Shown: positions 1,748 through 33,637 of the stretch, one piece after another
Numbering within the stretch: the first letter of the stretch is position 1
How the letters are laid out: every line of letters starts with the position of its first letter
NCBI GenBank assembly: GCA_965112735.1
Contig: OZ218957.1
Span: 2,232,001-2,296,000 of the forward strand
Origin: Phaeosaccion multiseriatum
Lineage: Eukaryota > Protista > Ochrophyta, other classes
Length of the DNA: 64,000 bases
Reading direction: 5' to 3'
Made by a program: the position numbers and the translations under genes
Notes under the pieces: generated by a model
Database searches by the model: none
The model's input: the letters and a program-made list of their open reading frames with translations, nothing else
What the model was told of the DNA's origin: nothing

Positions 1748-1795
<48 letters not shown>

Positions 1796-2815: not shown

Positions 2816-2846
<31 letters not shown>

Positions 2847-5592: not shown

Positions 5593-5650
<58 letters not shown>

Positions 5651-11618: not shown

Positions 11619-11666
<48 letters not shown>

Positions 11667-12227
11667 AGGGTAAAGCGTGTCCTGCGGCACCCCCTGTGCT
11701 CTCCTCTGTGCCCATGTGGCCTCTTCACGTACGAGTTGGAGTATGGCCGCGTAACTGCCCCACCGCTCCATGCCCGGCACGACGCGCTGCATGAGAAGCG
11801 TATCACCAACCCCTCCACCTCCCCCTCGGCCGGCGGCGGCGGTCACGTCGTCCAGCCTTCCAAAGAGCGCTGCCAAAGAGCTGGCGAGGCGCTCCACCTC
11901 AAGTCCGTTGTGGAACTGAAGCTGCACCGCCAGGAGAGCCATGTACACATCCCACACCCGCTCCACCCCCATGGCCCGCCCCACCTCCCCGGTCAGCATC
12001 TCCGCAGGCAGTAACTCAAGGGCTTCGAGGGTACCGTACCACAGTGCCTCGGAGAAGGAGCAGCCCCACTGCCTGACGTGCACGCGAAGCAGTCGAACGG
12101 GCACCGCTGCTGCTGCTTCTGCTGCTGCTTCTGCACCCCCACCTCCGTCGCCTCCTCCTCGTGGCATGGCTGCTACGAGCGGCTTGAGGTTTGCGCACAG
12201 GACCCGACCGTGCAGGAAGGCCGGGTA

Positions 12228-12265
<38 letters not shown>

Positions 12266-15200
12266 GAGTGGCGGTGGTGCTGATGTTTTCGCTACAGCTG
12301 AGGCTTCCCGTTCCGCTACCACCCATCGTACCTACACCAGCAGCGGTGGCAGTGGTAGCAGCAGCAGCAGCGGCGGTAGCAGCGGCCGAAGCAGCGGCTC
12401 CGATGGCGCTGTTCCACTCCCCGTCCTCGCGCAGAGCCCTAACAAGGGCGGTGGTCCTCCTGAGCATCACCACCGGGTGGCGTTGACACACGTCCTTCAA
12501 CAGACCGATGTGCAATCTTGCACCTGCCTCCTCCTTCCAGTGAACCCGACTTCCACCTCCGTCCAGACCTAGTCCATGCCCCACTGCCCTGCGGCCTGCC
12601 AGGCACCACAGAGCCCTCTTGACAGAAGCGTCGAGCGAGCACTGCACACCGACGCTCGAAAAGGGCTCCTCACGCTGCACAAAGCCCGCGAGCTGCCATC
12701 CGAGGAGGGGCAGGACCTCCTCCTCCCAGCGGTCTCTGCACGCCGCGTACACGGCCTCGGGGAAGGCAAGGTACATACGGAACAGCACAGCCCTCACAGT
12801 GGCACTCACCGCAGCGGTAGCAGCAGCAGCAGCAGGGGGCGGACCACCTTTCAGCCGTGCGACAAGGCGTTGGGCCAGCGAGGAGGCAGTCTCACCAGCG
12901 GAAGCTTCTGGCTTCACTCTGGCTCCGCCTCCTGCTCGCCCAGCCGTCGCCTTGCTCGACTCCACCTCCTCCCCAGCTGCTGCTTCCCCTCCCCCATCTG
13001 CACTATCCGTTTCCTCTTCCTTTGGCGTCTCCACCTTCACGCCTGCCCCCCTCTCCCGCCCTTCCCCGCCTCGCCCCGCCTCGTCCTTAAGCTCGCGCAG
13101 AAGGGCGAGCACCAGGTCCATACATGCCGTGAAGTGCCCTTTAGACGTCCCACATGCCGCGACGATATCCCTCATCCATTCCGCCCGGGAAGGCGGAAGA
13201 GCCCCTTCCCCAGTGCTGATGGCACTGCCGCTCACGACCAATACACTCTCCTTCCTCCTCTTTCTCCTCCTCTTTCGTCGCTTCTCATCCCTATCGCTAT
13301 CCTCCTCCTCATCGTTGTCGTCGTCGTCGCTGCCATCTTCTTCTTCGCCTCCCTCACTACTTTCCCCTGCCCCTAGCCCACCATCTCCACCCCCGTCACC
13401 ACCCGCACCGGCCGCAGGAGCACCCCCTCCTGCAGAGTCCAGCACAAGGAGAACAAGTAGCTTCTGCACCTCATGACAAGACAGGACAAGGCCGCACCGC
13501 CAGGGAGGAGCGGAAGGGACCCCTCCTGCCCCCCCGGGCCCAGGCCGCAACCCTCGCCCCCCCCCAGGGAGACTCGAGTCGCGCAGCACCGCCCACACGA
13601 AGCTCAGCGCCACGGCTGGCCTCAGCCCATACACGTCCTCCTGCAACAGCCAGCGAAGGCAGTGCTCCAGCACGGCCAAGGAGCGGCTCCGTAGAAGAAG
13701 CTCCAGCAGCTCGATGCGATAGCTCTGGGGCAAAGCGAAGAGGCGCTTACGCCCACCACTACCCGCGCCTCCATCACCGTCCAGTGTCTCCGCATCTACC
13801 CCTCTCGCTTCCACCTTGACCTTGACGTCCGCAGTGTCCATGTCGGCAGAGCCATCACCCTCCCCATTCGCCACTTCCTTCTCCTCCTCCTTCTTCACCC
13901 CTCTGAGCAAAGTCCTCTCGCCATCCTTCTTCTTCTCCCCCTCCTCCTCCTCCTCCCCCCCTAACTCTACTTGACTGCAGAAGATCGCCGGCCACAGAAG
14001 ATGCTCCACGGGCAAGTGCTCGAGATGAGTAAGGAGACACCGCTGAGGAGCGCCAACAAGAATTGCCGCTGTACCACCAACCGTTGCTGCTGTTGCTGTC
14101 CTTGTCTCCTCGTCCAATGCATCAGCAAGGACCTTCAACAGCACCCTTCCCACATCTCCGAGGGACGCCTCCCTCCTCCGCAGCAGTTCCCCCACTCCCC
14201 TTCCTGTCGTCATAAGCCGACCCCGACAGCTCTGTACCAGCGAGACCACTCCATCTGCACCGGCCCGCTCCACACAGCAGAGCACATGGTGCAGCCGGGA
14301 GGCCGAGTGTGCGGTCGTCAACTGCTCCTGCACAGTCCGTCGAAGCCAGTCTTCTGTGTCCAGAGCAGGTACCACCTCCGGCCTGCTCTGTAACTCAGAA
14401 GCTCCTCGCTGAAGTCGTCCGAGTTGGGCCTGCTGCAGCCCAATTTGTCCACCTCGTCCTCCGCTGGGCGTCTTACTCCTGTCCTCCTCCTCGTCTTGCC
14501 TGCTGTTGCCCTTACCACTCGGGCTCGGCATTACCTCTGCAGATAAAGACGAGAGCGAGAAGGAAGCTACCGAGGACGAGAACAGAGAAGGCGCGGCACT
14601 GCCTCGTGAGTATACCCTCCTCAGTCCGCCCATTCTGCACACACTCCCCGAAGATAGCAACCGCGACGTCCTGCCCCTGGCTCCGGCCTGCTGCTGCTGC
14701 TGCTGGAGCCGCCTCCGTTGCAGGAGGGCTTTCTCCTTCTCCGCTGTCTCCCCCCCCTCCTTCTGCACGTATGCGTAGAACCTCCCCTTAAACACGTCCT
14801 CATGCGCTGCTGCAGCAGTTGGTGATACAGAGCCCATCTGCCTGCCTTCTCCTTCTCCTCCAGCTGCCATATCACCAACTGCCACGGTTGTGGCACCCCC
14901 CATGGCGTCGTCGCCCCCATGCAAGCGGACGAAGGCCTTGATGCGGCTCAGCAACTTGCGAGCAATCTTCTTCCGAGTGCTCGTGCCCTTACCGAGACCC
15001 CACTGCGAGGTTGAAGCAGGCGCCAGCATATCTCTGTACACGGCCGCCGCAGCAGCGGTCGCAGCCGCCGCAACAGCTGACTGATCCTCTGGCGCCTCAA
15101 GCTGACTCTCTCCCGATAATGGCTTCTTCTTGGAGAGGGAGGAGGAGGAGGAGGAGGAGGAGGAGGTGGAGGGTAGCTCGTCGAGGCGTCGCAGCGCAAG

Positions 15201-18200
15201 CTTCACACACTGCAACGACAAGCCCGAGGCAAGCAGCAGCCGAGGCAAGAACAGCGCCGGCACGTAACGCGCAGCAATGGCGGAGATGAGTGGAGACTCA
15301 GTCTTGGCCAGCCGCACCCACAAATCCACGCTGATGGCCGCTGCCTCCCCCTCTTGCGTCTGAATCACCGCTCCACCCACCCCTAGCACCCTTCTCCGGC
15401 GACGGCCTCCTCCCCCTCCTTCTCTTCCTCCTCCTCCTTGCTGCACGGGCACAGATGGAGGCATGACGGCAGTCTCTGAGTGGCCCGGGAACAAGAGCTC
15501 TAGCAGGGAGGCCAGAGCACTCGGAGGAGCAAAACCTTCTCCTCCCTCTCTCACCCCTCCTCCCACGTTTCCAGACGCTGCCGCATGCAGAGAAGCTGCA
15601 TCTAACACGCCTTCCTCCTCCCTCGGGGGCTCATCGCCATAGTCGTGTGGCCTCTCATCACCCCCCCCGGAGCCCTGCCCCTCGCCACCAGCACCACCAC
15701 CAGCACCTTCAGCCTCTCCATCTTGCTGTTCCATCTGCTCCTTCTTGTCAGCCGCATGGACAGACACCGGCTCACCGTCGTCACCACTGCTGCTGCCCAC
15801 GTGAATGCTCAGCAGCACAACTGCCGCCTGAAGAAGAGGCAAGGGCACAGCGCTCATCCTCGCGGCGCGGAAACCCCCCTCCTCCTCCCCATCCACTGCC
15901 ATCTCCACCTTCTCCCCCTCCCTCGCCGTATCACCCCCCTCACGCTCCTCAGGGCTCAACATCACCAGGCAGGGGAAATCCGCAGTCAAATCGCTCCTCC
16001 AGCAGCTCCTGTCCTCCTCCTCCTCCTCCTCTGCCCCCCCACGAGAGGCGGAAGAGAAGACGGAGGAAGAGGAGGAAGATCCCACAATGGCCTCCGCAGT
16101 GGCCTCTGTGAGTGTCCGGAGAGCCAACTCGTGTACCTCCGGGTACACACGCAGCACCGCCGTGCTCACCATGGCACGACGGCCCAGCAGGCCGCACAGC
16201 GTCCGCGTGAAGAAGGCTGGGTTGCCTCGGTGTCTGCCGTTGTCGCTGTGGCTCCCACTCCGGCTCGTTCCGCTCGTGCGCGTCTCGTCTTCGTTCCTCT
16301 TCTGCTTGCCTTTCTCTCCTTCCACCACTACTACATCTGCGGCTCCACTCTTCACTTCTGTCACCACCAGCGAAGATGCCCCTTCCTTCGCCTCCGCCTC
16401 CCCCTCTCTCTCTTGCCCTTGCGGCCACCTTTGCCGCGTGACAGCGTTGAGCGCGAGTAAGTAGGCTCTAATGGGCTGCGTCGAGGTCTCGTGCTCTAGA
16501 GCCGCCCGCACAGCCTCCATCAGTAGCGGCTTCACCTCCTGCCAGGACGGGAGATGCATGGCCCGGAGCAGCCAGCCACAATCGTCCACATCCAGCATCA
16601 GACACAGCTCCTCCAGATCAATCTCCCCTCCTCCTCCTCCTCCTCCTCCTCCTGCTCCTCCTCCTGCTGCTCCTCCTCCTCCTCCTCCTGCTCCTCCTCC
16701 TCCTCCTACCAGTGCAGAAGCCAGAGCAAGCCCTCCCTCCCCACCCCCCTCCTGCTTGGGCTGCTGCTGTTCCTTCCCAAGACCACCGCGGCGCAGGAGG
16801 CGCGCACCTCCACTTGATGTTGGTGGTACAGCATCACTAATGGTGACGACGCTCTGCAGGGCCCTGCGTGCAGACACTCGCCTCGCCGAGTACGGGTTGC
16901 TGAGCTCCGCCATGAGCAGCTTGGCACACGCCATCGCCTGCTCCCTTCGCTGCTGCACCTCGGCCTCGCTAAGAAGGACAGCGGCGTCTCCTCCTGCCCC
17001 CCCGTACTCCTCCTCTCCACCATCGGAGAGATCCCCTTCGCCTTCTTCCCCACCTTGGTCTGCTCCTTCTTCGTCCCCTTCTTCGTTTCCCTTATCGCCT
17101 TCCTCCTCGTCGTCGCCTCCCATCGCCTCACCTCCTCCGACCATGTCCACATCATCGCTGTGCCCCAGCCTTGTCTCCTTTGCCTGCTTTGTATCCTTTG
17201 GCTTTGGTCCGTCTTCCCCACCATCCCCCCCGGCCTCAGTCTGAGCCGCGATCCCTGCCCTCTGCCATCCACTGCCCTCCATCCGCGCCTTCCTCTTCCC
17301 CTCCCAAAGGAACTCCATGACCCTCTCTCGGAGATGCGACACTAACGACTGTAGCTGCAGCAAGGCCGTCGCCCCTCCATAGTGACTGGTCACCGCCGTG
17401 CTGTCGAGGTGTGCCAGTAGCAGAAGGTAGCTCGTGGCCGCCATCGGTAGGCGATGTATGATGACCTGGGGCTCTGCCGCCATGGCAGACACCAGCCACT
17501 CTGCCGATCGCTCAGTGCTATCGAAGGTAATGTTCTGCTGATGCTCCTTCTTCTCCTCCTGCCCCTGCTTCTCCTGCTGGGAGCTCCCCGCCACCACTGC
17601 TGTAATAAAGTCAGGCTCCGTGCAGCGCCGCAGCCTGGCCCCAATGGCCAGCTCCTCGTCCAACTCCTTGAGCTGGGTCAGCACCCAGGGAGGAGGGGAG
17701 CGAGGCGCTTGCTGCAGGTCCAACAAGATGTAGTCGCTGTAGCGATGCCCATCCACAATCACGTCGGGGTCAAAGGCAGCGGCAGCGGCAGCGGCGGCAG
17801 CAGTGGCAGCGGCAGTGGCGGCAGCTTCAGCCGCAGCAGCTGCTGCCGCTGCAGCAGCGCTCCCCCGGGTATGCCTGCCGCTGTCTTTGCCTCCTGCCCG
17901 GGCCGCTGCCTTCTGAGCCTTACGTCTTCTCTTCTCTTCTGCCAGTCGCAATGCCTCCGCCTCTGCCTCCGCCTCCGCCTCCAAGTCACCATCCTCCTCC
18001 CCCAGAAGCTGGGCGACGGTGAACCTGCTTTTCCTCTTTCTTCCCCGCTGAGAGACGTTGGCGGCATCCTCCTCCTCCCTCCTCGCTCGCCCTTCTCCTC
18101 CCCCTCCTTCTCCGCCTCTGCCTTGCTGTCCCGCTCGACTCTCGGAGGGCGCCCCGACGAGAGAGTGCGTACTTGTCTCGCCAGACGACGGGGAGGACGA

Positions 18201-21200
18201 GGAGGACGACGATGATAACGATTCGGAAACCCTCGCTCGCTTACGCCCCTTGCTGCTGCCGCCTCCTCCTCCGGAGAGTAAGGAAGGTGGTGGAGGGGAA
18301 GAGCTCGCACCCCCTCCCCTGCCGCTACCGCTGCTGCTACTGTTTTTAATGTTGCCCCTGTCGCTCTTTTGCTGCTGCTGCTGCTGCTGCTGCCCCAAGG
18401 ACAGTCCGTGCTCCCCCCCTCCGTAACCATTGTCATTCCCATTGCCCTTCTTCCTCCTCCGCCTCGCTTTGTTGGCCGCCGCCTTATTGTTCCTTCTCAG
18501 GTCCATCTCGAAGATGATATCCAACGCCTTCTTCTCGCGCTCCCGAAGTGCCATCTCCACCGCCTCCATCTTCTTGCGAGCCTGCATCGGGTTCAGATTG
18601 ACTGCTTCTCCTCCTCCCCCCCCTCCTCCTTCTCCTCCTGCTTTCCCCTTATCCTCCTCGGAGGTATCAAATACCATGGACGCCCCAGGAGGCGGAAACT
18701 CGTACTGGGTGCACACAACCATCTGCATCAGGCACCGCAGAGTGGGCATTTTCTCCCACAGCCACTGCCCAATCGTGGCAGGGTTGCTTGCCGCCATCAC
18801 CAGGCACAGCAAGCAGGCTCGCCAGAACGGATCGCTGTGCGCCATGGCGGGCAAAGGCGTCAGCGGAGGCGGGGGGGGAGGTGGAGGAGGAGGAGGAGGA
18901 GGAGGTGGAGGGGGGGAAGGGGTGGCAGTGGAGGTGGTGCCATCGTTGCCGTCATCGCTGTTGAGAAGCGACTCCATAGCCATCATCTTACGCGCCCTGT
19001 CCTTCCGCTGCTCTTGCTGCTGCGGCTGCTGAGGTTTTGCTGGTGCTGGTGCTGCGGTTGGTGCGCCCTGTGTGTGTGTGTGTGTGTGCGTGCGTGCGTT
19101 TGTGGTTGTGTGATGTTTTATGTGAGAAGAGCAAGGGGCGGAGGGCAGGGAACAGGTAGGCAAGGCCAAAGTTGAGTCACTTGAAGTGGGGGGGGGGAAC
19201 ACATGAGAAGGTGAGAGCGTAAAAGGATAGTGACAGCACTTAAGCTCGCGACCGACTGTAGGAGCGGCAGGACCCACGCCAACTTGAAGAAGAATATCGG
19301 GGGGGGGGGGGGGGGAGGTTGGACGGAGGGAGAGAAGGAGCGAGAGAGAGGCAGAGATGGATGAAAGAGAAAGCGAGGAGAGAGAGCGCGAAAATAGAGC
19401 GATCGAGAGAGAGAGAGTGACATATAGAGATAGAGGTTCGCCTCTTGTCTCGGCCCTTGATCAAGCCACTCACCTCAATGTCCATTCCTTCTCCCTCTCC
19501 TCCTCTCTGTGCACGCGCATCCTCTGCAGCCTCTGTGCTGCCCCCGCCCTGTGCCGCCGCCGCCTCCGACTTGCCCGCAACACCACTACCACCACCACCA
19601 CCACCACCACCACCATCGCCCATCGGCAGCGGCTTCTTCGACGAACCCCCTCCCATCTCCAGCAGCGCAGCAATAGCGAGGGACTCCACAGGCGCAGGCA
19701 CATGAACAGGCACAGACACAGGCGCTACAGGCCTTGCACGAGGGTCTTGGAAATTGTATCTGGCGAGCTTGAATAGAGCCTTGACAATCCTCACGTCGTC
19801 CATCCGCAGCAGCTGCTGCTGTTGTTGGCCTTGCTGCTTCGCCTTGTCCCCTTGCTCGGGCTGCTGCTTGCCTTCATCTTGCTGCTCTGCTGGCCCCCCT
19901 CCACTCCCCTCTCCCTCGCCCGCGGTTGCTGCTGGCCCAGAAGCCTCTCCCTTCTTCACCACCTCCTTGGCAATACTGCCCCCTCTCTGCGCGTGAACAC
20001 TGAGATGGGAGGGCCCCTTCTCTCGCCTCTTCTCCGAACGAGCAGCTCGCAGCACAAGCCCCTCGATGACCGAGATAATGTCCCTCGGCTCCAGAGGCAG
20101 CGACCCCCGCCTCAGATTCAGCATCGCCGCCATGCCCTTGCCCTCCAACGCCCCAACCGTCGCACACATGTCTAAAGCCTTTCTCATTGGTCGTTGCAGA
20201 GCTGCTGCCCTCGCTGCCCCCTCCGCCGCCGCCGCTGCCGTGCCCGCAGCCGCACCCGTGGTAGCAGTCCCTGCAGCCTGCCCTCCTGCCGCCGCTGCTG
20301 CTGCCTCCATCGCTTGCATCTCCGGGGTCTCCCCGGGGGGGGGTGCCAAGAAAGTGAGGCGCTGCAGCACGGTCAGCAGAAAGGTGGCGTTATCCGCCGC
20401 CGGAGGAGGAGGAGGAGAAGAAGAAGCCAATGTAACGTCGCTGCTGTTGTTTTCTGCGTCGCTGGAGTCAGTGATTGCCATTGCCCTCTTAGAACTCGGA
20501 GTCGGAGTGATGGGAGAGAAGTCAGAAGGAGAAGAGTATGCCCCTCCTGGGACGAAGGGGCCGCCGGACAAAAGCGAGGGGATGCTGCTGCCTGCTGTCG
20601 GAGGAGCAAAAGCTGCCCCAGCTGATGGGGCGCCACCCTTGCTGCTGCCGCTGGTGGTGGTTCTGCTGATGCTGGTGCTGGTGCTGCTGCTGCTGCCATC
20701 TGTTCCCTCCCTGTCCTTCTTCTCATCGTCCTTGAGAAGCAGCGGCAGAGACCGGCTGCACCATTGGAGACACACGCTCTGGACGGCCTGTGCGGTGGTG
20801 ATGAAGTCTCCCTCCACCCCCCACTGAGTCGCCTCTGCCGCCCGCTGCTGCAGCACCTCCTCTCCATTGACCCCGTTCACAAAGCTACCGCTCCTCTTCA
20901 GTCTTCCTCCTGCCCCACCACCACTCCTCGACCTCTTGCGATTGTGCAGAGGTGCCAAGCTCTTCGCCGTAGAGAGGGCGTCTGCTGCCTTCTTCCGGGC
21001 CTGCATGATGGTGGCAGCGTCTCGACTCGCTCGTGTCAGGACCGAGAGTCGCACGAGAGAGACGATGCGAAGTATGCACCGCTTCCGACGAGCCATGCCG
21101 AGAGCCACGATCCCTCTTCGTTCTGCTCCTCCGCCATCTGCTGCCTTCTCCCCCTCCGCCACACCCTCCATAACTCCATCCAACAAGCCCTTGACGAGTA

Positions 21201-23878
21201 GCAACAGGGCCTCCGTGGGGAGCTGAAGCCGCCCCGTGCCTCGAAACAGCGCCGCCTCCACCACCTTCGCGCTGGGACTGCTTACACCCCCTCCTCCTCC
21301 TCCTCCTCCGCCTCCCTCTCCGTCTTCTCCTTCTCCTCCTCCTCCTCCTCCTCCTCCTCCTCCTCCTCCTCCTCCTCCTCCTCCTGCCTCGCTCTCAAGG
21401 GTTAGCTCCACGAGAACCGCCGCGACGGCTTTGATCGCCCCCTCCGCCCCCACCGCACTCACCACCGATGCCATGGTACGCGCCCCAGTCGATGAGAAGC
21501 CCGCCTGCAACACTGATGCTCCACCTCCTCCTCCCCCTCCTCCTGCTGCTGCTGCCCCCCCTCCCCCTCCTCCTCCTGCTCCTCCTCCTCCTGCTCCTAT
21601 TTCTCCTCCCCCCCCCCCTCCTCCTCCTACTCCATCCGGCACAATTCCCCCTGCCCCTCGCACAGCCCACGTTTGATCCATAATGGCATGCTTCACCACT
21701 CTCCTGGCCAGCTCCGGATGGCGTTTCAGAAGAAGGAGTACCGCCTCTGCATGCACGTCGACTTGGGAGACCTTGGGGCGGAGGCTCAGAATGCGATCAA
21801 CCACGCACTGATCTTCGACGAGTGCTTCCCCCTGGACAGCCTCTGCCAAGGCCACAAGCAGCAGCTTGCCGTAGCGAGACAGGGCGGCGCTTTGCATCCA
21901 CTGCTGGAGACTCTCGGCCGACAAGGCCCTGGAGGCTGGAAGGGGGGCGGTCTCAACGAAGGTCAGCACCAGCTGCCAAGCCGTACCTCCCCCGGAGGAG
22001 CCACCCGTGCCACCACTACCACTGCTGCTGCTACTGCCGCCGCCACCCCCGCCCCCGCCGCTACTTCCCATGCCCCCACCGCCCCCTCCACCGCCGCTGC
22101 TGCCTCTGCTGAGGAGCCCCATGCCACCACCGCCACCCACACCGCCGCTGATGCTTCTACCGCCCAGTCCAATGCCTCCACCACCAGAAATGCCGCCACT
22201 GCCGCTACTACTACTACTGCCACTGCTGTCTTTCAGTGCCTTGGATCGCGTCTCTAGCGCTTGTATCACCACTTGCTGTGCCTCGCGCAAGCTCCCATGA
22301 AACCGATCAGGAGGAGGTGTGCTGCTCCCCTCTGGAGCCGCCGACGGTGCAGAGGTGGAGGGCAGCAAGGACGCCTGAGCTGGCACCTCGAAGGCTCGCC
22401 ACGCCGCATCGTATCCCTCTCCCTCGACCTGAGGCTGGGAGAGCGCACGACGATGCCCACCTGCTGTAGGAGGGTTTGTGTTAGACGTGCCGGCGCCGCC
22501 GCCACCGGCCTTTGGTGACGTGAATCCCACCACTCCGGCCTCTACCACCACCTCTTCCTCGTCACCGGAAGACTCTTCCGAGTCAGATCCAGCGGCGGCA
22601 GCGGCGGCGGCAGCGGCGGCAGCAGAGGGGCCCATCTGTATGGCCACAGGAGCAGCGGCGGAAAGGCTTGGTTGCCGCGGTCTCTCCTCCATTTCTTCAT
22701 CCTCGTCCTCATCCTCCCCCTGCTGAGCTTTCCCCTTGTCCCCCTTGCCCTTACTGTCCTTGGTTACCATGACATCTACGACGGGATTCTCCTTCTCTTT
22801 CTCTTTCTCTTTCTCCGCCTCTTCCTTCGGATCCCACGCGGTTCTCAGGCCCGCAACGAGCGCGGCGCAGGCTGGATGGGCTACCCAATTCCTCGCGCGG
22901 AGGGCATCTTCCATGTAGCAAGCGAGCAGCCCGTGCGGCCACTCTTTGACTCTTCCGAGGCTGCTCGTAATCACAGAGGCAGCCAATGCCTGCTCCGGCC
23001 GTGGAGGGGCCGCCGCATCCGCCGCCATGGCCCCCCTCTGCGATTGCGAGGCTCGCTTGTCAATCTCTCCCCTCAGCAGCGTGCACACCGAGTGGAGTAC
23101 CTCTCCGTTCCAAAAGGCGTGGGGGCGCTCTCTCGCAAAGGCGCGCAGAGCAGCGGCGCAGCTCCCCTTTGGGGGCAGTGAGTCCATTCTCTGTCTCTGC
23201 TGCTGCTCCTCTCGCCGCTTTTGTGGAGTGCTAGGGGCATGTTGATGTAGGCCCGGCGATCGAGACTGGAGGGCGGGGGGTCGGGGGGGAGGAAAGGCGA
23301 AGGGAGGAGGCATGTACAGAGGCGATGGTGAATGAGGAGCATGGCGGTTTAGGGCAGAGCACGGCCATGCCTTCCGGAAGGATAGACAGCGAGTGTTCGC
23401 CCTGGGGCTTGTGCTTCTCGTGAGAGGAGATGCAAGCCCATGATGGATGATCTGACACGTTTCTCCTCCTCGTATGACTCCACCTTCCCCTCTCCCTCCA
23501 TTTCGAAGGCTGGTCTACGACCCTCGACCCCTACTGCCCAGCAGGCAAATCCAATCCAATGTATTTCCCTCTACTCCTGAGACTTGAGAGACTTACATCA
23601 TTCTTCGAGGCCTTCTTGTCGGCCACACGCTGAACAAGGTCCTTGACAAGGGCCACATAGCGCGCGCTGCACGCCACAGGGGCCACCTCAAGGCCGCTTG
23701 CAGGGGAGGGAGGCGGGGGGCAGAGGCTGCGCAGCTGCTGACACAGCTCCTCTTCCACGGCGTTGAGCGGCCGCTGCTCTTCCTCCTCTCGTGCTTCCTG
23801 TCGCTTCCCTCGGCTTGCAGCGCCAGAGCGATCGCTGCCAATGCCGGTTGCGCTTCCTCTCCCGCCAATCGGAGTCAT
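11346..23878 (-). CDS. INTS1: Integrator complex subunit 1-like, ~3,900 aa (exons ~23878-23597, 23265-19474, 19067-11346)
   Basis: INTS1 blocks in order: WPHGLLACYMEDALRARNWVAHPAC, ASNPATIGQWLWEKMPTLRCLMQMVVCTQYEFPP, LDLQQAPRSPPPWVLTQLKELDEELAIGARLRRCTEPDFI, QRHPVVMLRR, LEALELL. Both proposed introns are GT-AG and phase 0, joining the ORFs in frame. The first exon is less certain. Confidence 0.88.
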
Positions 23879-26064: not shown

Positions 26065-27689
26065 CTGATGGACGATAATTTGGTTTGGACTCTTGTACAC
26101 TAAAGAATACAAGCGAGAGTCTTGTCTTACGGGAATCAACCCAAGAATTACGTGTGTGTGAGGGGAAGGTATTATATGCACCCTTTGGTGCCATCTGTGC
26201 TGCCTCAAAGGGACTCGTTTTGAACGCGCCGGGGTTTAATCCCCGAACGCGTCAGTCTCCTCCGAGCGAAGCAAAGGGGCGCAGTGGATGCCCTGCGAGT
26301 GTCCTATATAGACCGCTGAAGACCCACAGCCAGCCGGCGTCTGATTGCCCCAATTGCCCCCATAGCACGTGCATAGAGACCACTAACTCCTCCCTCCCTT
26401 CTCTCCCTCCGGGGCGCAAATAGCTTGACGCTTTCGCCGCCTTATCACTCGCCTATTTATCATTTATATACTTTTCCACAAATACTTACTTAATGAGCTG
26501 GTGCGAGTCATGAACTTTCGCAAATTGCTCTTACGACTCGCCCATGGTACAATGGTGCGCGCCAAGCTTCACCGCGGCGAAGAAAGGCAGGCGATGAGGC
26601 GGACGGCTTCGCGTCACTACATCCCCAGTCCCGAGGTATCAGCACCAGCACACGCCCCTGCCACGCCCCCCACACGCACGCACGCTCGCAGCGCCTTCCG
26701 TCCCCGCCTCTTCTTCTCACTCGCCACCACCATGCTCTCCTCCAGCACCTCCCACTCGTCCTGCTGCTTCTCGTCATCCTCATTACCCCCTGCTCCTCCT
26801 GAGCGATAGCGCTGGTAGGCAGACACAAAGCCTCGAATCGTGTTCTCCAGGCTGGCCCCCTTCCTCTTGGTGCGGACAGCGTAGTGGGGCAGCAGCAACA
26901 CCTTACTCTGCCCCACATACACCACCACGCCATTCGACAGCTCCCTATCCCGGTGGCCCCAGCAGGCTATGGCAGCGTCGGCAGCAGCATCTTCCAGCTC
27001 TCTCCACAGACCATTGGGAAGCTGAATCTCATCCCCGACATGAAGCCCCAGCCTCGCAAGCAAACCTACTCCATCCCCATCCTCCTCCGCTGCTTCCTTC
27101 TCTTCCTGCTGCCTCTCCCCTCCCTCAACTGAAGGGGGGCATTTCGCCCTCTTCCTTCCTCTCGTATCGATGTCGGTGGCAGCTCCTCGCTTGGGTTTAG
27201 GCGTGCACTGGGCAATCTCCGTCTGCTCCGCTCCGTCCCTTTTCATTCGAGCATGGCGTGTACACATCCCACCACATCCACCTTTTGCTTGCTTCTCACA
27301 CTCCTCCACAGTACAAGTCTTTCTCACAGCCCCATGCCTAGTGCACAATCCTCCCTGCCTCGACTGCTTCTCACACCCCTCCACAGTACACGTCTTTCTC
27401 ACAGCCCCATGCCTAGTGCACAATCCTCCCTGCTGCGAATGCTTCTCACACCCCTCCACAGTACACGTCTTAGGTATCTTCACACCTCCGTGCCTAATGC
27501 ATAATCCTCCTTGGACCCGATGCTTCTCACACCCCTCCACAGTACACGTCTTTCTCACAGCCCCATGCCTAATGCAAAATCCTCCTTGGACCCGCTGCTT
27601 CTCACACCCCTCGACAGTACACATAAAACGCATTGTCACAGCTCCGTGCCTAGTGCACAATCCTCCCTGCTGTGACTGCTTCTCACACC

Positions 27690-27943
27690 GCCTTGTCACC
27701 CGCACCACCCACAGCAGGATAGTTCACATATCACCTCCACCACCTCACTCCTTCCCACACCCCTTCATCTCCTCCTCCCCCCTTCACTCCCTTCCCATTC
27801 CCCATTATCCTCTACTCTACCACCCTTACCATCCTCTTCCCCTCCACATCACGCTCCATCAATACCACACATACACACATCTACACATGGTTACAACTTA
27901 CCTCGAGCGCTCCAATACTGAGCCCATAAGCTCTAATATACAT
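27690..27943 (+). mobile_element. CRE-like non-LTR retrotransposon, 5'-truncated copy 1 (~254 bp, 3' UTR only)
   Basis: Matches the 3' end of copy 4, ends ...GCTCTAATATACAT, and is flanked by the duplicated target CTCACACC. Confidence 0.85.
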
Positions 27944-28030
27944 CTCACACCCCTCCACAGTACACGTCTTTCTCACAGCTCCATGCCTAGTGCACAATCC
28001 TCCCTGCTTCGACTGCTTCTCACACCCCTC

Positions 28031-28396
28031 GACTGGGGGCTCATGGGAGCCATCGACGGAGCGGCCGCCTGAGGAGCAGGAGTACACCAGCCAGCAGACA
28101 GCGAGACCATCAGCACACAGCATAGCAACCACAGTTAGTCACGCCTTGTCACCCGCACCACCCCCAGTAGGATAGTTCACATATCACCTCCACCACCTCA
28201 CTCCTTCCCACACCCCTTCATCTCCTCCTCCCCCCCTCACTCCCTTCCCATTCCCCATTATCCTCTACTCTACCACCCTTACCATCCTCTTCCCCTCCAC
28301 ATCACGCTCCATCAATACCACACATACACGCATCTACACATGGTTACAACTTACCTCGAGCGCTCCAATACTGAGCCCATAAGCTCTAATATACAT
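28031..28396 (+). mobile_element. CRE-like non-LTR retrotransposon, 5'-truncated copy 2 (~366 bp)
   Basis: Same 3' end; flanked by CTCACACCCCTC(GAC); 5' junction has microhomology CCCTCGAC. Confidence 0.85.
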
Positions 28397-28487
28397 CTCA
28401 CACCCCTCGACAGTACACGTCTTACGTATGCGCACAGCTCCATGCCTAATGCACAATCCTCCTTGGACCTGATGCTTCTCACACCCC

Positions 28488-29063
28488 CACCAAACGGACG
28501 AGCTCATCGAGGCGATGGCCATCCACAAGGCATCAAGAGGGCTCGGCCCCGCAGCGGCGGCAGCCACGGGCCCCATCAAGGGCCTCCTGCGCCAACAACT
28601 GTCCCTCGCCCTTCAACGCGCCCTCTCACAGCGGGAGATCAGGTATGGCACCCTCCTTCGAGCCACGATGACGCAGCACGAAGCAGCAGAAACCCTCGAC
28701 TGGGGGCTCATGGGAGCCATCGACGGAGCGGCCGCCTGAGGAGCAGGAGTACACCAGCCAGCAGACAGCGAGACCATCAGCACACAGCATAGCAACCACA
28801 GTTAGTCACGCCTTGTCACCCGCACCACCCCCAGTAGGATAGTTCACATATCACCTCCACCACCTCACTCCTTCCCACCCCCCTTCATCTCCTCCTCCCC
28901 CCCTCACTCCCTTCCCATTCCCCATTATCCTCTACTCTACCACCCTTACCATCCTCTTCCCCTCCACATCACGCTCCATCAATACCACACATACACGCAT
29001 CTACACATGGTTACAACTTACCTCGAGCGCTCCAATACTGAGCCCATAAGCTCTAATATACAT
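28488..29063 (+). mobile_element. CRE-like non-LTR retrotransposon, 5'-truncated copy 3 (~576 bp)
   Basis: Same 3' end; flanked by CTCACACCCC; includes the ORF tail HQTDELIEAM...DGAAA*. Confidence 0.85.
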
Positions 29064-29075
29064 CTCACACCCCTC

Positions 29076-29879
29076 GGAGCGCTCCCCCACGGCCACAACA
29101 CCATGGCCCCCGCAGAATGGACCATGGCCCTTCGTCGCAACCTCGGTGTCAACACACCATACGCGGACCCGCCCCCACCCTGCCTCGGCACAGGCTGCGC
29201 CCGCACGGCAAGCACCACCCACGCCACCATCTGCCCCCGCACCGGCCTCCACAACCACACACACCACCTCCTCGTCAAGGCCTTTGGGAGGATGATGCAC
29301 AGCGTGGGCATAGGCGGAGCACGAGTAGAGGACCAGACCTGCTTCGACGGCCCCACGGGCACCCGAGCAGGCCGAGACCTACGCATGGACCTGACCTATC
29401 CCGCAGGTAGCTTCCCGGGAGCGGACGCACCCCTGCGGAGAAACCTCCTCTGCGACATCACCGTCACCAACCCCACCGCCCCCACCCACGTGGGACGGGC
29501 CTCCACCACGCCAGGCCACGCAGCAGCCGCCGCCGAAGAGCGCAAGCGCACGCACTACCTGGGCAGTTTTCTGCCCGGGACTTCAACCCTGAAGTGCATT
29601 GCAATCGAGACGTACGGCAGACTGGGCCACCAAACGGACGAGCTCATCGAGGCGATGGCCATCCACAAGGCATCAAGAGGGCTCGGCCCCGCAGCGGCGG
29701 CAGCCACGGGCCCCATCAAGGGCCTCCTGCGCCAACAACTGTCCCTCGCCCTTCAACGCGCCCTCTCACAGCGGGAGATCAGGTATGGCACCCTCCTTCG
29801 AGCCACGATGACGCAGCACGAAGCAGCAGAAACCCTCGACTGGGGGCTCATGGGAGCCATCGACGGAGCGGCTGCCTGA
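29076..29879 (+). CDS. C-terminal fragment of the retrotransposon ORF: CCHC zinc knuckle and RLE (PD-(D/E)xK) endonuclease; RT domain lost by truncation
   Basis: ALRRNLG; C-x4-C-x7-H-x3-C (CLGTGCARTASTTHATIC); RMD...CDITVTNP; AAAAEERKRTHY; IAIETYGRLG; QQLSLALQR. This is the motif order of CRE/SLACS/Cnl1-type RLE elements. Confidence 0.85.
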   Translation, partial: GALPHGHNTMAPAEWTMALRRNLGVNTPYADPPPPCLGTGCARTASTTHATICPRTGLHNHTHHLLVKAFGRMMHSVGIGGARVEDQTCFDGPTGTRAGRDLRMDLTYPAGSFPGADAPLRRNLLCDITVTNPTAPTHVGRASTTPGHAAAAAEERKRTHYLGSFLPGTSTLKCIAIETYGRLGHQTDELIEAMAIHKASRGLGPAAAAATGPIKGLLRQQLSLALQRALSQREIRYGTLLRATMTQHEAAETLDWGLMGAIDGAAA

Positions 29880-30203
29880 GGAGTAGGAGTACACCAGCCA
29901 GCAGACAGCGAGACCATCAGCACACAGCATAGCAACCACAGTTAGTCACGCCTTGTCACCCGCACCACCCACAGCAGGATAGTTCACATATCACCTCCAC
30001 CACCTCACTCCTTCCCACACCCCTTCATCTCCTCATCCCCCCTTCACTCCCTTCCCATTCCCCATTATCCTCTACTCTACCACCCTTACCATCCTCTTCC
30101 CCTCCACATCACGCTCCATCAATACCACACATACACACATCTACACATGGTTACAACTTACCTCGAGCGCTCCAATACTGAGCCCATAAGCTCTAATATA
30201 CAT
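29076..30203 (+). mobile_element. CRE-like non-LTR retrotransposon, 5'-truncated copy 4 (~1.13 kb) with zinc knuckle and restriction-like endonuclease
   Basis: Flanked by the 12-bp duplication CTCACACCCCTC (29064-29075 and 30204-30215); ORF remnant followed by a 324-bp G-poor 3' UTR. Confidence 0.9.
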
Positions 30204-30905
30204 CTCACACCCCTCCACAGTACACCTCTTGCGTATCCTCACAGCTCCGTGCCTAATGCACAATCCTCCCTGCTGCGACTGCTTCTCACACCCCTCCACA
30301 GTACATGTCGTCCGCGTCTTCCGCATTCTCGCAGCTTCGTGGCTAATGCAAAGCCCTCCTTGGACCTGCTTCTTCTCGCAGCCCTCCACAGTACACGTCT
30401 TGACCACAGCTCCGAGGCTCAAGTAAAGTCCGCCCTGCTGCGAATGCTTCTCACACCCCTCCCCAGTCCGCGGTTTTTGGATCCCGGCTGCGAGGCAGAG
30501 GGTCTTCTCCTCTGAGAGTTCTTCAACAGATCAACGGGATAAGATATCAGGGTATGATGATGGAAACCTCAGCTCTGAGTGGCTCCTCCCTCACGTTCTC
30601 TCCCGCGGATCGCTGTGGAGAGATTGTCTTCTAGTTCCCCCCCAACGCCTTCAAAACAAAACAAACTCGCCTCAGGAGATGAGGGTCTCACGCCCATCCA
30701 CCGCACACCAGCTCTTGAGTGGCTCTTCCCTCTCGTCTCCTCCCGCACGTTGCTGAAAGACAAGTCTTTGTGCAGAGTATTGCCTGTGAAATGGGAACCT
30801 GTGAAAGGAGAGAGAAAATGAGAAAATGGGAAAGGGGGGATATGGCGCGTCTGGTGCCATCTGTGCTGGCCAAATTTTGCAGCTGAAATTTTGTATTTTT
30901 TTCTT

Positions 30906-31805
30906 CAATCGCACTGCCTATTGACCTAACGACCTGTTCGCCACTCCCGCCTCGAGTGTCGTGTGCATGAGCTCCCTGCTCCCTCCGACGTCAGTCACAT
31001 CGCCATGATGAGTATGGGAGCCTGACAGCAAGAGAGCAGCCCAGCCTACAGCAGCCCCAGCCTGATGGCCTCACAGCCGAAGCCTGAGAACCTCTCCTCC
31101 CCATCCCACAACCGAATCATAGAAGATGCAAGTGATCTAATCAAAAGCAAAGTCAAAGAGGAAAGGCCCCTCTTCGTCTGTAGCTTTGACCCGGCTCATG
31201 CCTTCCGTGCTCCCACCTCCCTGCACAGCCAACACAACACACATGAATACATCCAGAGGGCAACAGCGGCAGAGCAGAGCAGAGCAGAACAGAGCAGCAG
31301 CGAGGGCCCGGCGTACGAGCGACAGGGCGCAGCTGCTTCACACAAGTCCGTGTGTACGGGTCACGTCAAGCACGGGGCAGAATGTCTGAACTCAACCCCG
31401 CTAGGGAATTCACAGGATAGGCACCAGCCTCTATCTAAAGTACTGCTTCTACCAAGAACACTCCCAGCGTCCATCATGGCGGTGGCAAGGCGTGAAAGTC
31501 ACTCGCCCCATTACCCTCCTCCCTGTTGGCTTATTCCAACCCACAACCCCCTGGACAAGACTCGCAGACACTTCCTCCCCTCTCTCTCCTCGTCGATGCT
31601 CTCGGTCTTCCGCTGTCTCCTGCCCCAAGCCTCCGACCTCCAACACCCCCTAGCCCCCCCCCGACCCACCCACACCCACCCGCCCACCCGCCCACCCACC
31701 ATGGTACGATGGTGCAAGCCAAGCTTCACCGTGGCGAAGGTAGGCAGGAGATGAGGCGGACGGCTTCGCGTCACTACATCCCCAGTCCCGAGGTATCAGC
31801 ACCAG
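30906..31805. repeat. Segmental duplication unit (3' flank of the Cys-repeat gene), paired with 33638-34862
   Basis: Near-identical from CAATCGCACTGCCTATTGACC to the gene's last codons. Upstream flanks 30460-30870 and 33010-33401 are also homologous. Confidence 0.9.
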
Positions 31806-32976
31806 CACAAGCCCCTGCCACGCCCCCCACACGCACGCACGCTCGCAGCGCCTTCCGTCCCCGCCTCTTCTTCTCACTCGCCACCACCATGCCCTCCTCC
31901 AGCACCTCCCACTCGTCCTGCTGCTTCTCGTCATCCTCTTCACCCCCTCCTCCCCCTGAGCGATAGCGCTGGTAGGCAGACACAAAGCCTCGAATTGTGC
32001 TCTCCAGGCTGGTCCCCTTCCTCTTGGTGCGCACAGCGTAATGGGGCAGCAGTAACACCTTACTCTGGCCCACATACACCACCACGCCATTCGACAGCTC
32101 CCTATCCCGGTGGCCCCAGCAGGCTATGGCAGCGTCGGCAGCAGCATCTTCCAGCTCTCTCCACAGACCATTGGGAAGCTGAATCTCATCCCCGACATGA
32201 AGCCCCAGCCTCGCAAGCAAACCTACTCCATCCCCATCCTCCTCCGCTGCTTCCTTCTCTTCCTGTTGCCTCTCCTGTCCCTCAACTGAAGGGGGGAACT
32301 TCGCCCTCTTCCTTCCTCCCCTATTGATGTCAGTGGCAGCTCCTCGCTTGGGTTTAGGCGTGCACTGGGCAATCTCCGTCTGCTCCGCTCCCTCCCCTTT
32401 CATTCGAGCATGGCGTGTACACATCCCACCAGATCCACCTTTTGCTTGCTTCTCACACTCCTCCACAGTACACGTCTTTCTCACAGCCCCATGCCTAGTG
32501 CACAATCCTCCCTGCCTCGACTGCTTCTCACACCCCTCCACAGTACACGTCTTTCTCACAGCTCCATGCCTAGTGCATAATCCTCCTTGGACCCGCTGCT
32601 TCTCACACCCCTCCACAGTACACCTCTTGTGTATCCTCACAGCTCCATGCCTAGTGCATAATCCTCCTTGGACCCGCTGCTTCTCACACCCCTCCACACT
32701 ACACGTCTTGCGTATCCTCACAGCTCCGTGGCTAGTGCACAATCCTCCCTGCTGTGACTGCTTCTCACACCCCTCCACACTACACGTCATCCTCACAGCT
32801 CCGTGCCTAGTGCATAATTGTTCCTGCTGTGACTGCTTCTCACACCCCTCCACAGTACATCTCGTCCGCGTCTTCCGCATTCTCGCAGCTTCGTGGCGAA
32901 TGCAAAGCCCTCCTTGGACCTGCTTCTTCTTACAGCCCTCCACAGTACACGTCTTGACCACAGCTCCGAGTCTCAA
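31774..32976 (-). CDS. Cys-repeat (WRKY19-like zinc finger) protein, copy B, uninterrupted; 7 repeats plus a unique C-terminal domain
   Basis: Repeats C-x4-C-x9-C-x2-H (CTVEGCEK...GGLCTRHG). The frame is open up to 33084 but the listed start is TTG, so the true start or an upstream exon is unknown. Confidence 0.75.
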   Translation of the reverse strand: MRLGAVVKTCTVEGCKKKQVQGGLCIRHEAARMRKTRTRCTVEGCEKQSQQEQLCTRHGAVRMTCSVEGCEKQSQQGGLCTSHGAVRIRKTCSVEGCEKQRVQGGLCTRHGAVRIHKRCTVEGCEKQRVQGGLCTRHGAVRKTCTVEGCEKQSRQGGLCTRHGAVRKTCTVEECEKQAKGGSGGMCTRHARMKGEGAEQTEIAQCTPKPKRGAATDINRGGRKRAKFPPSVEGQERQQEEKEAAEEDGDGVGLLARLGLHVGDEIQLPNGLWRELEDAAADAAIACWGHRDRELSNGVVVYVGQSKVLLLPHYAVRTKRKGTSLESTIRGFVSAYQRYRSGGGGGEEDDEKQQDEWEVLEEGMVVASEKKRRGRKALRACVRVGGVAGACAGADTSGLGM

Positions 32977-33637
32977 GTAAAGTCCGCCCTGCTGCGAATG
33001 CTTCTCACACCCCTCCCCAGTCCACGATTTTTGGATCCCGGCTGCGAGGCAGAGGGTCTTCTCCTCTGAGAGTTCTTCAACAGATCAACGGGATAAGATA
33101 TCAGGCTATGATGATGGGAATCTCAGCTCTGAGTGGCTCCTCCCTCACGTTCTTTCCCGCGGATCGCTGTGGTGTTTTTTCTTCTTCTTCCCCCCCAACC
33201 TTCAAACAAAACAAATGCGCCTCAGGAGATGAGGGTCTCACGCCCATCCACCGCACAACAGCTCTTGAGTGGCTCTTCCCTCTCGTCTCCTCCCGCACCC
33301 GGCTGAAAGACAAGACTGTATATTACGTGTGAAAGGGGAGACTGTGAATGGAGACAGCAAAAAAGGGTAATGGGGCGCGTCTGGTGCCATCTGTGCTGGC
33401 CGAAATGAATGAAACGACCCTTATGATGCCATCTCTGCGCTGCCTAAAAGTAACGACTTTAACCGCCCCTCGGATTTAGGCCCCAGGCGCATCAGATGCC
33501 CGCAAGTGTCCGATGCCGAATCTCCCGCGCATAGAGGGATCACTGGAGACCCACAGCCAACCTGCGTCTAATGGCGCACATAGCACGCGCATAGACTGCC
33601 ATGTTCAACGCGAGAGTGAAAAAAGTATTTGTTCAAT

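What the first reader, a model, noticed from the sequence alone, without database searches (positions are those of the whole stretch)
27681..30215. Site-specific CRE-like retrotransposon that targets a protein-coding zinc-finger repeat
Seen: four same-orientation copies (~254, 366, 576 and 1128 bp) share one 3' end (...GCTCTAATATACAT, no poly-A) and have different 5' truncations. Each sits at the same base of the 75-81 bp codon repeat, TGCTT|CTCACACCCCTC (between E and K of CTVEGCE|K on the host strand), with 8-15 bp target duplications. Three consecutive repeats are hit, one of them twice. The longest copy encodes a CCHC knuckle and an RLE nuclease. I saw no copy elsewhere in the window despite abundant (CA)n. 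Known: RLE-clade elements insert by target-primed reverse transcription into rDNA (R2), spliced-leader genes (SLACS/CRE/CZAR), telomeric repeats, snRNA/tRNA genes or microsatellites. Inference: this element uses a multicopy coding domain as its target, which I do not recognise as described, and its RLE would be a new sequence-specific nuclease.
Basis: partly seen in the sequence, partly recalled or inferred. Interest (0 to 1): 0.92.

Follow-up and report, generated by a model that had tools for sequence, protein, structure and literature searches.

The report
Retrotransposon homing to zinc-finger codons
A young 6.7-kb jumping gene of the R2-like kind (reverse transcriptase plus restriction-like nuclease) inserts at one exact base inside the Glu-Gly-Cys-Glu|Lys codons of a repeated zinc-finger domain, so a family of protein-coding genes serves as the landing pad that its known relatives find in RNA genes or simple repeats.

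Summary
Four same-orientation, 5'-truncated copies end at 27943, 28396, 29063 and 30203. Each is followed by CTCACACCCCTC, inside three consecutive Zf_WRKY19 repeats of a minus-strand gene. Cutting them out restores a 515-codon frame collinear with an empty tandem paralog. Genome-wide there are 118 element 3' ends. Eighty-one run into the same zinc-finger sequence, and at least 370 sites are empty. The full-length element is 6,733 nt with two ORFs. ORF2 has a non-LTR-type RT, and its C-terminus models confidently (pLDDT 92) onto the linker, CCHC knuckle and RLE of R2 (Z 17). Occupied sites vary almost only at host wobble positions. A second, 33%-identical RLE family in the same genome has unrelated flanks. 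The targeting claim is supported. The "CRE-like" label could not be tested because no reference sequences were on hand. "The RLE is the specificity determinant" is an inference that R2 structures only partly back. I found no report of a protein-coding repeat as a target of such elements. The mechanism is ordinary target-primed reverse transcription; the target class is new. The scan has already noted this same element in several other windows of this genome.

The parts
26617..30530 (-). Host gene: an array of Zf_WRKY19-type zinc fingers (75/81-bp codon repeats) followed by a C-terminal domain of unknown family. It is interrupted by four insertions.
   Evidence: Pfam PF24906 E 5.7e-28. Removing the insertions at TGCTT|CTCACAC restores a 515-codon open frame with 12 fingers.
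27689..27943 (+). Insertion 1: the last ~254 nt of the element (3' UTR only). Target duplication CTCACACC at 27682-27689 and 27944-27951.
   Evidence: source lineage shared with insertion 4
28026..28396 (+). Insertion 2: the last ~366-371 nt, with 5 nt of microhomology (CCCTC) at the 5' junction. The 12-bp target copy lies at 28019-28030 and 28397-28408.
   Evidence: source lineage shared with insertion 3
28487..29063 (+). Insertion 3: the last ~577 nt (end of ORF2 plus the 3' UTR).
29064..29075 (+). A single 12-bp target copy (CTCACACCCCTC) shared by insertions 3 and 4. It is a regenerated target that was hit a second time.
   Evidence: Copies 3 and 4 differ at 4 diagnostic sites, so this is not a tandem duplication.
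29072..30203 (+). Insertion 4: the last ~1128-1132 nt. It holds the ORF2 C-terminus (to the stop at 29877-29879) with the CCHC knuckle and RLE nuclease, and the 324-nt 3' UTR (29880-30203) that ends ...GCTCTAATATACAT with no poly-A.
   Evidence: Model pLDDT 92. R2 matches at Z 15.6-17.2.
30204..30215 (+). Downstream target copy of insertion 4. The zinc-finger repeat continues from here.
31774..33015 (-). Tandem paralog of the host gene with 7 target sites and no insertion. It serves as the empty-site control.
   Evidence: Pfam PF24906 E 7.1e-34. dN/dS against the repaired neighbour is 0.49.

Best explanation
This is a sequence-specific non-LTR retrotransposon. It is 6,733 nt long. ORF1 has 490 codons of unknown family. 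ORF2 has about 1,620-1,740 codons: lineage-specific N-terminal zinc-binding motifs, then RT, then linker, CCHC knuckle and restriction-like endonuclease. It has a 327-nt 3' UTR and no poly-A. It inserts by target-primed reverse transcription into the codons GAG GGG TGT GAG | AAG (E-G-C-E|K) of Zf_WRKY19-type zinc-finger repeats, always antisense to the host gene. Shown: the fixed 3' junction, variable 5' truncation, 8-12-bp target duplications, repeated independent hits, the domain content, and the tolerance of wobble-position variants. Inferred from the junctions and from R2 biochemistry: the nuclease nicks the host sense strand between GAG and AAG, that 3'-OH primes cDNA synthesis on the element's 3' UTR, and the other strand is cut 12 nt away. 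This regenerates a full target that can be hit again, which gives head-to-tail arrays. The element persists because the target is multicopy (at least 450 sites) and is held constant by selection on the zinc-binding motif.
For: Window: four copies with one 3' end and four different 5' ends sit at the same base of three consecutive repeats. Excision restores the reading frame, and the tandem paralog is empty. Copies 1 and 4 differ from copies 2 and 3 at 4 diagnostic sites, so there were at least 2 source copies and separate events. Genome: there are 118 3' ends, and 81 continue for 21 nt or more into the zinc-finger repeat. Of 42 junctions read in full, 31 run into zinc-finger sequence, 5 are head-to-tail with another copy, 2 are followed by an inverted element piece, 3 have the motif and then other DNA, and 1 has no target. 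More than 20 distinct 5' truncation points each lie just after the target motif. At least 370 unoccupied sites exist. Targets belong to diverged paralog groups on contigs C1, C8, C2 and C13, and occupied sites vary almost only at host third-codon positions (+1, +4, +7, +10, +13, +16, +22). Protein: Pfam RVT_1 is at threshold. The profile hits the R2 and LINE-1 RTs at E 1e-16 to 1e-17. CCHC, E, D, D, K and Y are invariant or nearly so across 40 relatives. The C-terminal model aligns to the R2Tg, R2Pm and R2Bm C-termini at Z 15.6-17.2, and the next fold class reaches Z 7.5 at most. Control: a 33%-identical RLE family in the same genome has a fixed 3' end but unrelated flanks at 6 of 6 loci. Copies are 98-100% identical, and at least one full-length copy has both ORFs open.
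Against: No RNA data were available, so transcription and current activity are not shown. The nick positions are inferred from junctions and were not assayed. Some copies were multiplied by segmental duplication: identical junctions occur in L010 and L016, and copies are spaced 4,098 bp apart on C1. The 81 hits are therefore fewer than 81 events. About ten copies, mostly a variant ending ATATAAAT, lie outside recognisable zinc-finger arrays, so specificity is not absolute. The clade was not placed phylogenetically.
Confidence: 0.9

Rival explanations
1. The position is set mainly by RNA-DNA homology and not by protein reading of the DNA. Transcripts run through into the downstream target (CTCACAC...), and this tail anneals to the nicked target, as the 5-nt 28S extension does in R2Bm. 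The protein would then have only loose sequence preference.
For: Copies outside zinc-finger arrays are still followed by 4-12 nt of the motif (CTCA, CTCACAC, TTCACACCC, CTCACACCCCTC). These could be carried along with the RNA. R2Bm structures show such a heteroduplex (PMC10499050).
Against: The tail varies with the local paralog (CTCG..., GTCG..., TTCA...), as expected for resident target DNA and not for a carried copy. A short tail alone could not pick about 450 sites out of 67 Mb. The 5' junctions also sit on the motif.
Confidence: 0.12
2. The specificity is only apparent. A few old insertions were spread by unequal crossing-over, gene conversion and segmental duplication within the tandem zinc-finger gene clusters.
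For: The clusters are tandem and some element-bearing units are clearly duplicated (C1:680-693 kb at 4,098-bp spacing; L010 = L016).
Against: More than 20 different 5' truncation points were found. Two source lineages occur within one gene. Insertions lie in diverged paralog groups on five contigs. Copies are 98-100% identical to one another although they sit in paralog groups with diverged target sequences.
Confidence: 0.03
3. The zinc-finger 'gene' is not a cellular gene but part of another mobile or selfish element, so this would be the familiar case of a transposon nesting in a transposon.
For: There is a weak Pfam hit to CxC6, a cysteine cluster associated with KDZ transposases (E 5.7e-08, just above cutoff). 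The family is large, clustered and fast-evolving. The C-terminal domain has no known family.
Against: The strong hit is to Zf_WRKY19 (E 7e-34), and CxC6 overlaps the same cysteine repeats. No transposase, RT or terminal repeats were seen beside the two genes in the window. dN/dS of 0.38-0.54 indicates purifying selection.
Confidence: 0.05

Closest known systems
R2 (28S rDNA-specific RLE non-LTR retrotransposon; R2Bm, R2Tg, R2Pm structures)
   Same: The order RT, linker, CCHC knuckle, C-terminal PD-(D/E)xK nuclease is the same, with a fold match at Z 15.6-17.2. Both insert at one base of a multicopy, functionally constrained sequence, show 5' truncation, lack poly-A, and show signs of a short target-derived tail at the 3' end.
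   Different: No Myb domain was detected. The RLE has no sequence-level similarity to R2. This element has two ORFs where R2 has one, and a 12-bp target duplication where R2 makes a small deletion or none. It lies antisense to a protein-coding host gene, so it cannot ride the host transcript as R2 rides pre-rRNA. No HDV-like ribozyme was found. The target is a protein-coding repeat.
CRE clade (CRE1/2, SLACS, CZAR in trypanosomatid spliced-leader genes; MoTeR, FoTeR, Cnl1 at fungal telomeres)
   Same: These are site-specific RLE elements of protists and fungi. SLACS and CZAR also have two ORFs (from my own knowledge). They target tandem multicopy sequence.
   Different: Their targets are spliced-leader exons or telomere repeats. 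Clade membership by RT phylogeny was not testable here.
Utopia / NeSL (U2 snRNA-gene-specific RLE elements, present in oomycete stramenopiles; PMC4640811)
   Same: These are RLE elements in stramenopiles with strict specificity for a small multicopy gene family, often found in arrays carrying several insertions.
   Different: Their target is an RNA gene. Oomycete Utopia carries an RNase H upstream of RT, and NeSL a Ulp1 protease. Neither was found here by Pfam.
Homing endonuclease genes, inteins and group II introns (analogy only)
   Same: They home to sequence that encodes conserved protein motifs, so selection on the protein keeps the target from escaping. Here the variation among hit sites is confined to wobble positions.
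   Different: The machinery is unrelated. Those elements splice out and leave the host gene functional, whereas these insertions destroy the reading frame.

Membership tests
Non-LTR (LINE-type) retrotransposon | Reverse transcriptase of the non-LTR type | tested here: met
   Pfam RVT_1 scores 29.4-29.7 bits at a cutoff of 29.6. A profile of 23 relatives hits R2 at E 3.6e-17 and LINE-1 ORF2 at about E 3e-16 to 1e-15.
Non-LTR (LINE-type) retrotransposon | Common 3' end, variable 5' truncation, target-site duplication, no terminal repeats | tested here: met
   more than 20 truncation points, one 3' end, and 8-12-bp duplications.
RLE-bearing non-LTR elements (R2, CRE, NeSL, R4, HERO groups) | C-terminal CCHC knuckle followed by a PD-(D/E)xK restriction-like endonuclease, and no APE domain | tested here: met
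   C, C, H, C, E, D, D, K and Y are invariant or nearly so in 40 relatives. The model has pLDDT 92. The top 7 Foldseek hits are all R2 at probability 1.0. Z is 15.6-17.2 against R2 C-termini. No Exo_endo_phos hit was found.
RLE-bearing non-LTR elements (R2, CRE, NeSL, R4, HERO groups) | N-terminal zinc-finger DNA-binding module | tested here: inconclusive
   A C-x4-C-x16-H-x3-H motif and two RING-H2-like cysteine clusters are visible. Pfam gives only zf-RING_2 at E 2e-4, below its cutoff. A single-sequence model reached only pLDDT 42.
R2 clade in the strict sense | Myb domain and insertion into 28S rDNA | tested here: not met
   No Myb hit at E<=1. The target is a zinc-finger coding repeat.
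   No Repbase or named CRE sequences were reachable. All 150 listed relatives and the 10 looked up carry no informative name.
Utopia / NeSL | U2 snRNA or spliced-leader target; RNase H or Ulp1 protease domain | tested here: not met
   Flanks are zinc-finger repeats. Pfam finds no RNase_H or Peptidase_C48.
Zf_WRKY19 zinc-finger proteins (the target) | Repeated PF24906 domain in an open reading frame under purifying selection | tested here: met
   PF24906 E 5.7e-28 and 7.1e-34. A 515-codon frame is restored by excision. dN/dS is 0.49. Expression was not tested.

The most novel reading that the evidence does not exclude
The element parasitises protein-level constraint. Its 12-bp duplicated target is exactly the codons for E-G-C-E, which include a zinc-ligand cysteine, and it tolerates every synonymous variant seen. 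The host family therefore cannot escape by silent change. That would make this the first retrotransposon whose 'safe harbour' is kept constant by selection on a protein motif. It may also drive the birth-and-death turnover of a rapidly diversifying, possibly nucleic-acid-binding, zinc-finger repertoire in an arms race.
Probability: 0.35. Interest if true: 0.8.

Novelty: new variant of a known kind. Interest (0 to 1): 0.66.

Why it matters
Site-specific RLE retrotransposons are textbook parasites of rRNA genes, spliced-leader exons, snRNA and tRNA genes, other transposons, microsatellites and telomeres (PMC4640811). A member that homes to a protein-coding domain repeat widens what counts as a safe harbour. 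It also shows a mobile element destroying members of a gene family one finger at a time. It offers a natural, very divergent R2-like protein with a new and well-defined target and a 12-nt staggered cut: at most 31% identity to any protein outside its own cluster among 1.84 billion cluster representatives. That is relevant to current efforts to mine R2-like enzymes for targeted DNA insertion. The contrast with a non-specific sister family in the same genome gives a ready comparison for finding the specificity module.

Tried and rejected
- The word-indexed protein search found nothing with the single sequence and only 5 uninformative hits with the profile.
- Sequence and profile searches of the C-terminal domain against PDB found no R2 hit; only the fold comparison did.
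- The names and sources of the best relatives were uninformative.
- The contigs of three relatives had too little 3' flank to read their targets.
- An exact look-up of a neighbouring window gene, meant to identify the organism, found nothing. The organism was therefore not verified here; earlier notes call it a stramenopile alga.
- Rfam found no ribozyme or other family in a full-length copy.
- The 3' UTR is not unusually structured (z -1.1).
- There is no slippery heptamer in the 330-nt ORF1/ORF2 overlap.
- The single-sequence model of the ORF2 N-terminal finger region was unusable (pLDDT 42), so no fold search was run on it.
- The N-terminal fingers are not conserved in relatives.
- The Atlas gave nothing for the host C-terminal domain.
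- Read support: only short Logan contigs were available, so the long-range four-copy structure, expression and strand could not be tested.
The census of full-length copies and 5' junctions therefore rests on 34 loci plus pattern counts.
- No complex prediction was run.
Full report
**1. What is in the window**

The stretch 27.2-30.5 kb on the minus strand encodes an array of 75/81-bp repeats of the type C-T-V-E-G-C-E-K-x5-G-G-L-C-x-R-H-G-A-V. Pfam recognises these as Zf_WRKY19 (PF24906, E 5.7e-28).

Four stretches on the plus strand interrupt the array. They share one 3' end: the 24-nt end occurs exactly 4 times in the window and nowhere else. Their 5' starts differ.

- 3' ends: 27943, 28396, 29063, 30203.
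- 5' ends: about 27689, 28026, 28487, 29072, each with 1-5 nt of microhomology to the target.
- Each 3' end is followed by CTCACACCCCTC.
- Each 5' end is preceded by TGCTT plus 8-12 nt of the same motif.
- On the host strand the junction lies between GAG (E) and AAG (K).

Copies 3 and 4 are separated only by one 12-bp target copy.

Cutting the four pieces out at TGCTT|CTCACAC gives an uninterrupted 515-codon frame with 12 fingers. It is collinear with a tandem paralog at 31.8-33.0 kb that has 7 target sites and no insertion. dN/dS between the two genes is 0.49: 0.54 in the fingers and 0.38 in the C-terminal domain. This is consistent with coding constraint.

Copies 1 and 4 share four diagnostic bases against copies 2 and 3. 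At least two source copies contributed, and the adjacent pair 3/4 is not a duplication.

**2.

The genome (G000) is 67.1 Mb in 22 contigs. The window is C8:2232001-2296000.

- The element's 3' end occurs 118 times.
- 81 of these continue for at least 21 nt into the zinc-finger repeat, with no hit for the reversed control pattern.
- Of 42 junctions I could read in full, 31 run into zinc-finger sequence.
- 5 are head-to-tail junctions: the target copy is followed by another copy, twice by the full-length 5' end.
- 2 have the target copy followed by an inverted element piece.
- 3 have the motif followed by other DNA (two of them are duplicates of one another).
- 1 has no target.
- More than 20 different 5' truncation points were seen, each directly after the target motif.
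- At least 370 unoccupied sites match a strict 26-nt target pattern.

The sites are concentrated on C1 (0.08-0.78 Mb) and C8 (1.44-1.77 and 2.17-2.27 Mb). The element copies are concentrated there too.

Some element-bearing units were copied by segmental duplication. Examples are the 4,098-bp spacing on C1 and the identical junctions of L010 and L016. The number of independent events is therefore below 81 but clearly large.

Hit sites belong to diverged paralog groups (CTCACACCCCTCCAC on C8, CTCGCACCCCTCAAC and GTCGCACC... on C1, TTCACACCCCTCGAC on C13). Across 31 distinct occupied sites, nearly all variation falls at positions +1, +4, +7, +10, +13, +16 and +22. These are the third codon positions of the host frame. 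The duplicated 12 bp are the codons E-G-C-E.

**3. The element**

A full-length copy (C8:1620944-1627676, minus strand; built from L031 and L034) is 6,733 nt long.

- The 5' end starts with a T-run...CTGCTTAAGACAGGGCCACC ATG. Full-length copies have a few extra, variable nucleotides at the 5' junction.
- ORF1 (nt 36-1505, 490 codons) has no Pfam match.
- The ORF2 frame is open from nt 1175 to 6406. Its first ATG, at 1547, lies 42 nt after the ORF1 stop.
- The two frames overlap by 330 nt with no slippery heptamer.
- The N-terminal third of ORF2 has one C2H2-like motif and two RING-H2-like clusters. Pfam gives only a sub-threshold zf-RING_2 hit. Its low-complexity Gly/Arg-rich stretches and fingers are not shared with relatives.
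- The RT is at the Pfam threshold. A profile of 23 relatives hits R2 (E 3.6e-17) and LINE-1 ORF2 (about E 3e-16) RTs.
- An exhaustive HMMER search of 1.84 billion representatives found 706 relatives, with the best at 29-31% identity over the whole RT-RLE region. The ten checked carried no informative name.

The C-terminal 331 residues, aligned with 39 relatives, show an invariant or near-invariant C...C...H...C, E, D (RMD), D (LxDxT) and K...Y. The AlphaFold model has mean pLDDT 92.

- The seven best Foldseek hits in PDB are all R2 proteins.
- VIA-align gives Z 17.2 (241 residues, rmsd 4.0) to residues 909-1169 of one zebra-finch R2 (R2Tg) entry.
- It gives Z 15.6-15.9 to R2Bm residues 836-1107, which are the linker, CCHC knuckle and RLE.
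- The next fold class, the PD-(D/E)xK cap-snatching nucleases, reaches Z 7.5 at most.
- By sequence alone the RLE is not detectable as R2-like.

No Rfam family, and so no HDV-like ribozyme, was found. The 3' UTR is C-rich and not unusually structured.

Copies are 98-100% identical, and at least one has both ORFs open. The family is therefore young and possibly active. No RNA data were available.

**4. Mechanism**

Shown:
- one exact 3' junction;
- variable 5' truncation;
- an 8-12-bp duplication;
- a fixed antisense orientation;
- re-use of regenerated targets, giving tandem arrays;
- tolerance of synonymous target variants.

Inferred, by analogy with R2 (PMC10499050):
- ORF2 protein bound to the 3' UTR nicks the host sense strand at GAG^AAG.
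- It primes cDNA synthesis from that 3'-OH.
- It cuts the other strand 12 nt away.

In R2Bm the target is read by the N-terminal zinc finger, the Myb domain and an RT loop some 22-34 bp upstream, and by the RLE over 7 bp at the cut. A 5-nt target-derived RNA extension pairs with the nicked strand.

By the same logic, the lineage-specific N-terminal fingers are the likeliest main specificity module here, with some contribution from the RLE.

About ten copies lie outside recognisable finger arrays, many of them a variant ending ATATAAAT. They are still followed by 4-12 nt of the motif. This fits either a short core preference of the nuclease or a target-derived tail on the RNA. I could not separate the two.

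Because the element is antisense to the host gene, it cannot depend on host-gene transcription as R2 depends on pre-rRNA. Its promoter is unknown.

**5. Control and depth in time**

A second RLE family in the same genome is 33% identical in the C-terminal domain and has copies on many contigs. It has a fixed 3' end (...CTATTAAGTCAATAAAG) and a (CA)n tract in its 3' UTR. Its flanks are unrelated at all six loci examined. The specificity is therefore a property of this family and not of the method.

An older copy, 76% identical in protein, at C1:453.6-454.1 kb also abuts a zinc-finger target. This hints that the association predates the current burst. It is one case only.

**6. Comparison with what is known**

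Five full-text searches and recent R2 reviews turned up no protein-coding repeat as a target. The large computational survey cited there covered animal genomes only. Repbase reports are not in the library, so absence from the literature is not proven.

The element meets the tests for a non-LTR retrotransposon and for the RLE group. It fails those for R2 in the strict sense (no Myb, not rDNA) and for Utopia/NeSL. CRE membership could not be tested.

**7. Verdict**

The element is a new, very divergent member of a known mechanistic class with a new class of target.

Earlier notes of this scan describe the same element in other windows of this genome (s1-338363, s1-350142, s1-342149, s1-360292, s1-350131). 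My results agree with them and were obtained independently on this window and genome-wide.

Noticed in passing
G000 C1:4580812-4581705, C2:1475318-1476211, C12:2438566-2439459, C7:2031582-2032475, C9:1676991-1677884, C13:3092878-3093771 (L038-L043): A second RLE retrotransposon family, 33% identical to this one in the C-terminal domain, is dispersed on many contigs. It has a fixed 3' end ...CTATTAAGTCAATAAAG, a (CA)n tract in its 3' UTR, and unrelated flanks at all six loci. It is apparently not site-specific. Protein P0002 (Logan) is nearly identical to its C-terminus.
   Followed up: partly
G000 C3:1463380, C4:855952, C4:2128021, C4:4785464-4785594, C5:95190-95250, C5:102338, C13:1605445, C14:3048087: A sub-variant of the element ends ATATAAAT where the main family ends ATATACAT. 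It lies mostly outside recognisable zinc-finger arrays and is followed by only 4-12 nt of the target motif. These copies may be off-target insertions, divergent single fingers, or target sequence carried on the RNA.
   Followed up: partly
L031:7800-8300 (minus strand; ORF2 residues ~280-440 of the 1719-residue frame): ORF2 carries two RING-H2-like cysteine/histidine clusters upstream of the RT (Pfam zf-RING_2 E 2e-4, below its cutoff). They are absent from the relatives compared and are unusual for an RLE element.
   Followed up: partly
L002/L031 near 1-213 and L003 (C8:1617.3 kb and C8:1572.3 kb): In two cases the target copy after an element's 3' end is followed by an inverted fragment of the same element. 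This looks like twin-priming-type inversion or a nearby opposite-strand event.
   Followed up: no
L019/L031:3630-3645 (C8:1620.9 kb): Between two 12-bp target copies there are only two bases (AT). This is possibly an extremely truncated insertion that left just the last two nucleotides of the element.
   Followed up: no
window 26620-27210 (minus) and 31774-32360 (minus): The ~200-residue C-terminal domain of the zinc-finger genes has no Pfam or Atlas match. Another note of the scan (s1-363024) suggested a GIY-YIG-like domain. Pfam at E<=1 gave no such hit, only Zf_WRKY19 and a weak CxC6 hit over the fingers.
   Followed up: partly
window 11346-19277 and 19240-23313 (minus strand): Two very long open frames (2,643 and 1,357 codons) lie end to end with no Pfam match. 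They are unexplained.
   Followed up: no
run X6 (organism B), laid on window 27914-27946, 28637-28734, 29287-29485, 29605-29790, 30161-30203: A run labelled as a different organism holds near-identical pieces of the element at very low depth. One 3' end continues into a different flank. This could be a related strain or species carrying the element, or cross-contamination.
   Followed up: no
L035 (NCBI GCA_040384045.1, contig JAWVHH010030677.1): A distant relative (P0005, 31% identity) in an AT-rich genome has the same ~45-nt stretch before its 5' end and after its ORF. This suggests head-to-tail arrangement there too.
   Followed up: no
full-length element (C8:1620944-1627676): The sense strand is strikingly T-poor: 10.6% T, 37.8% C.
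   Followed up: no
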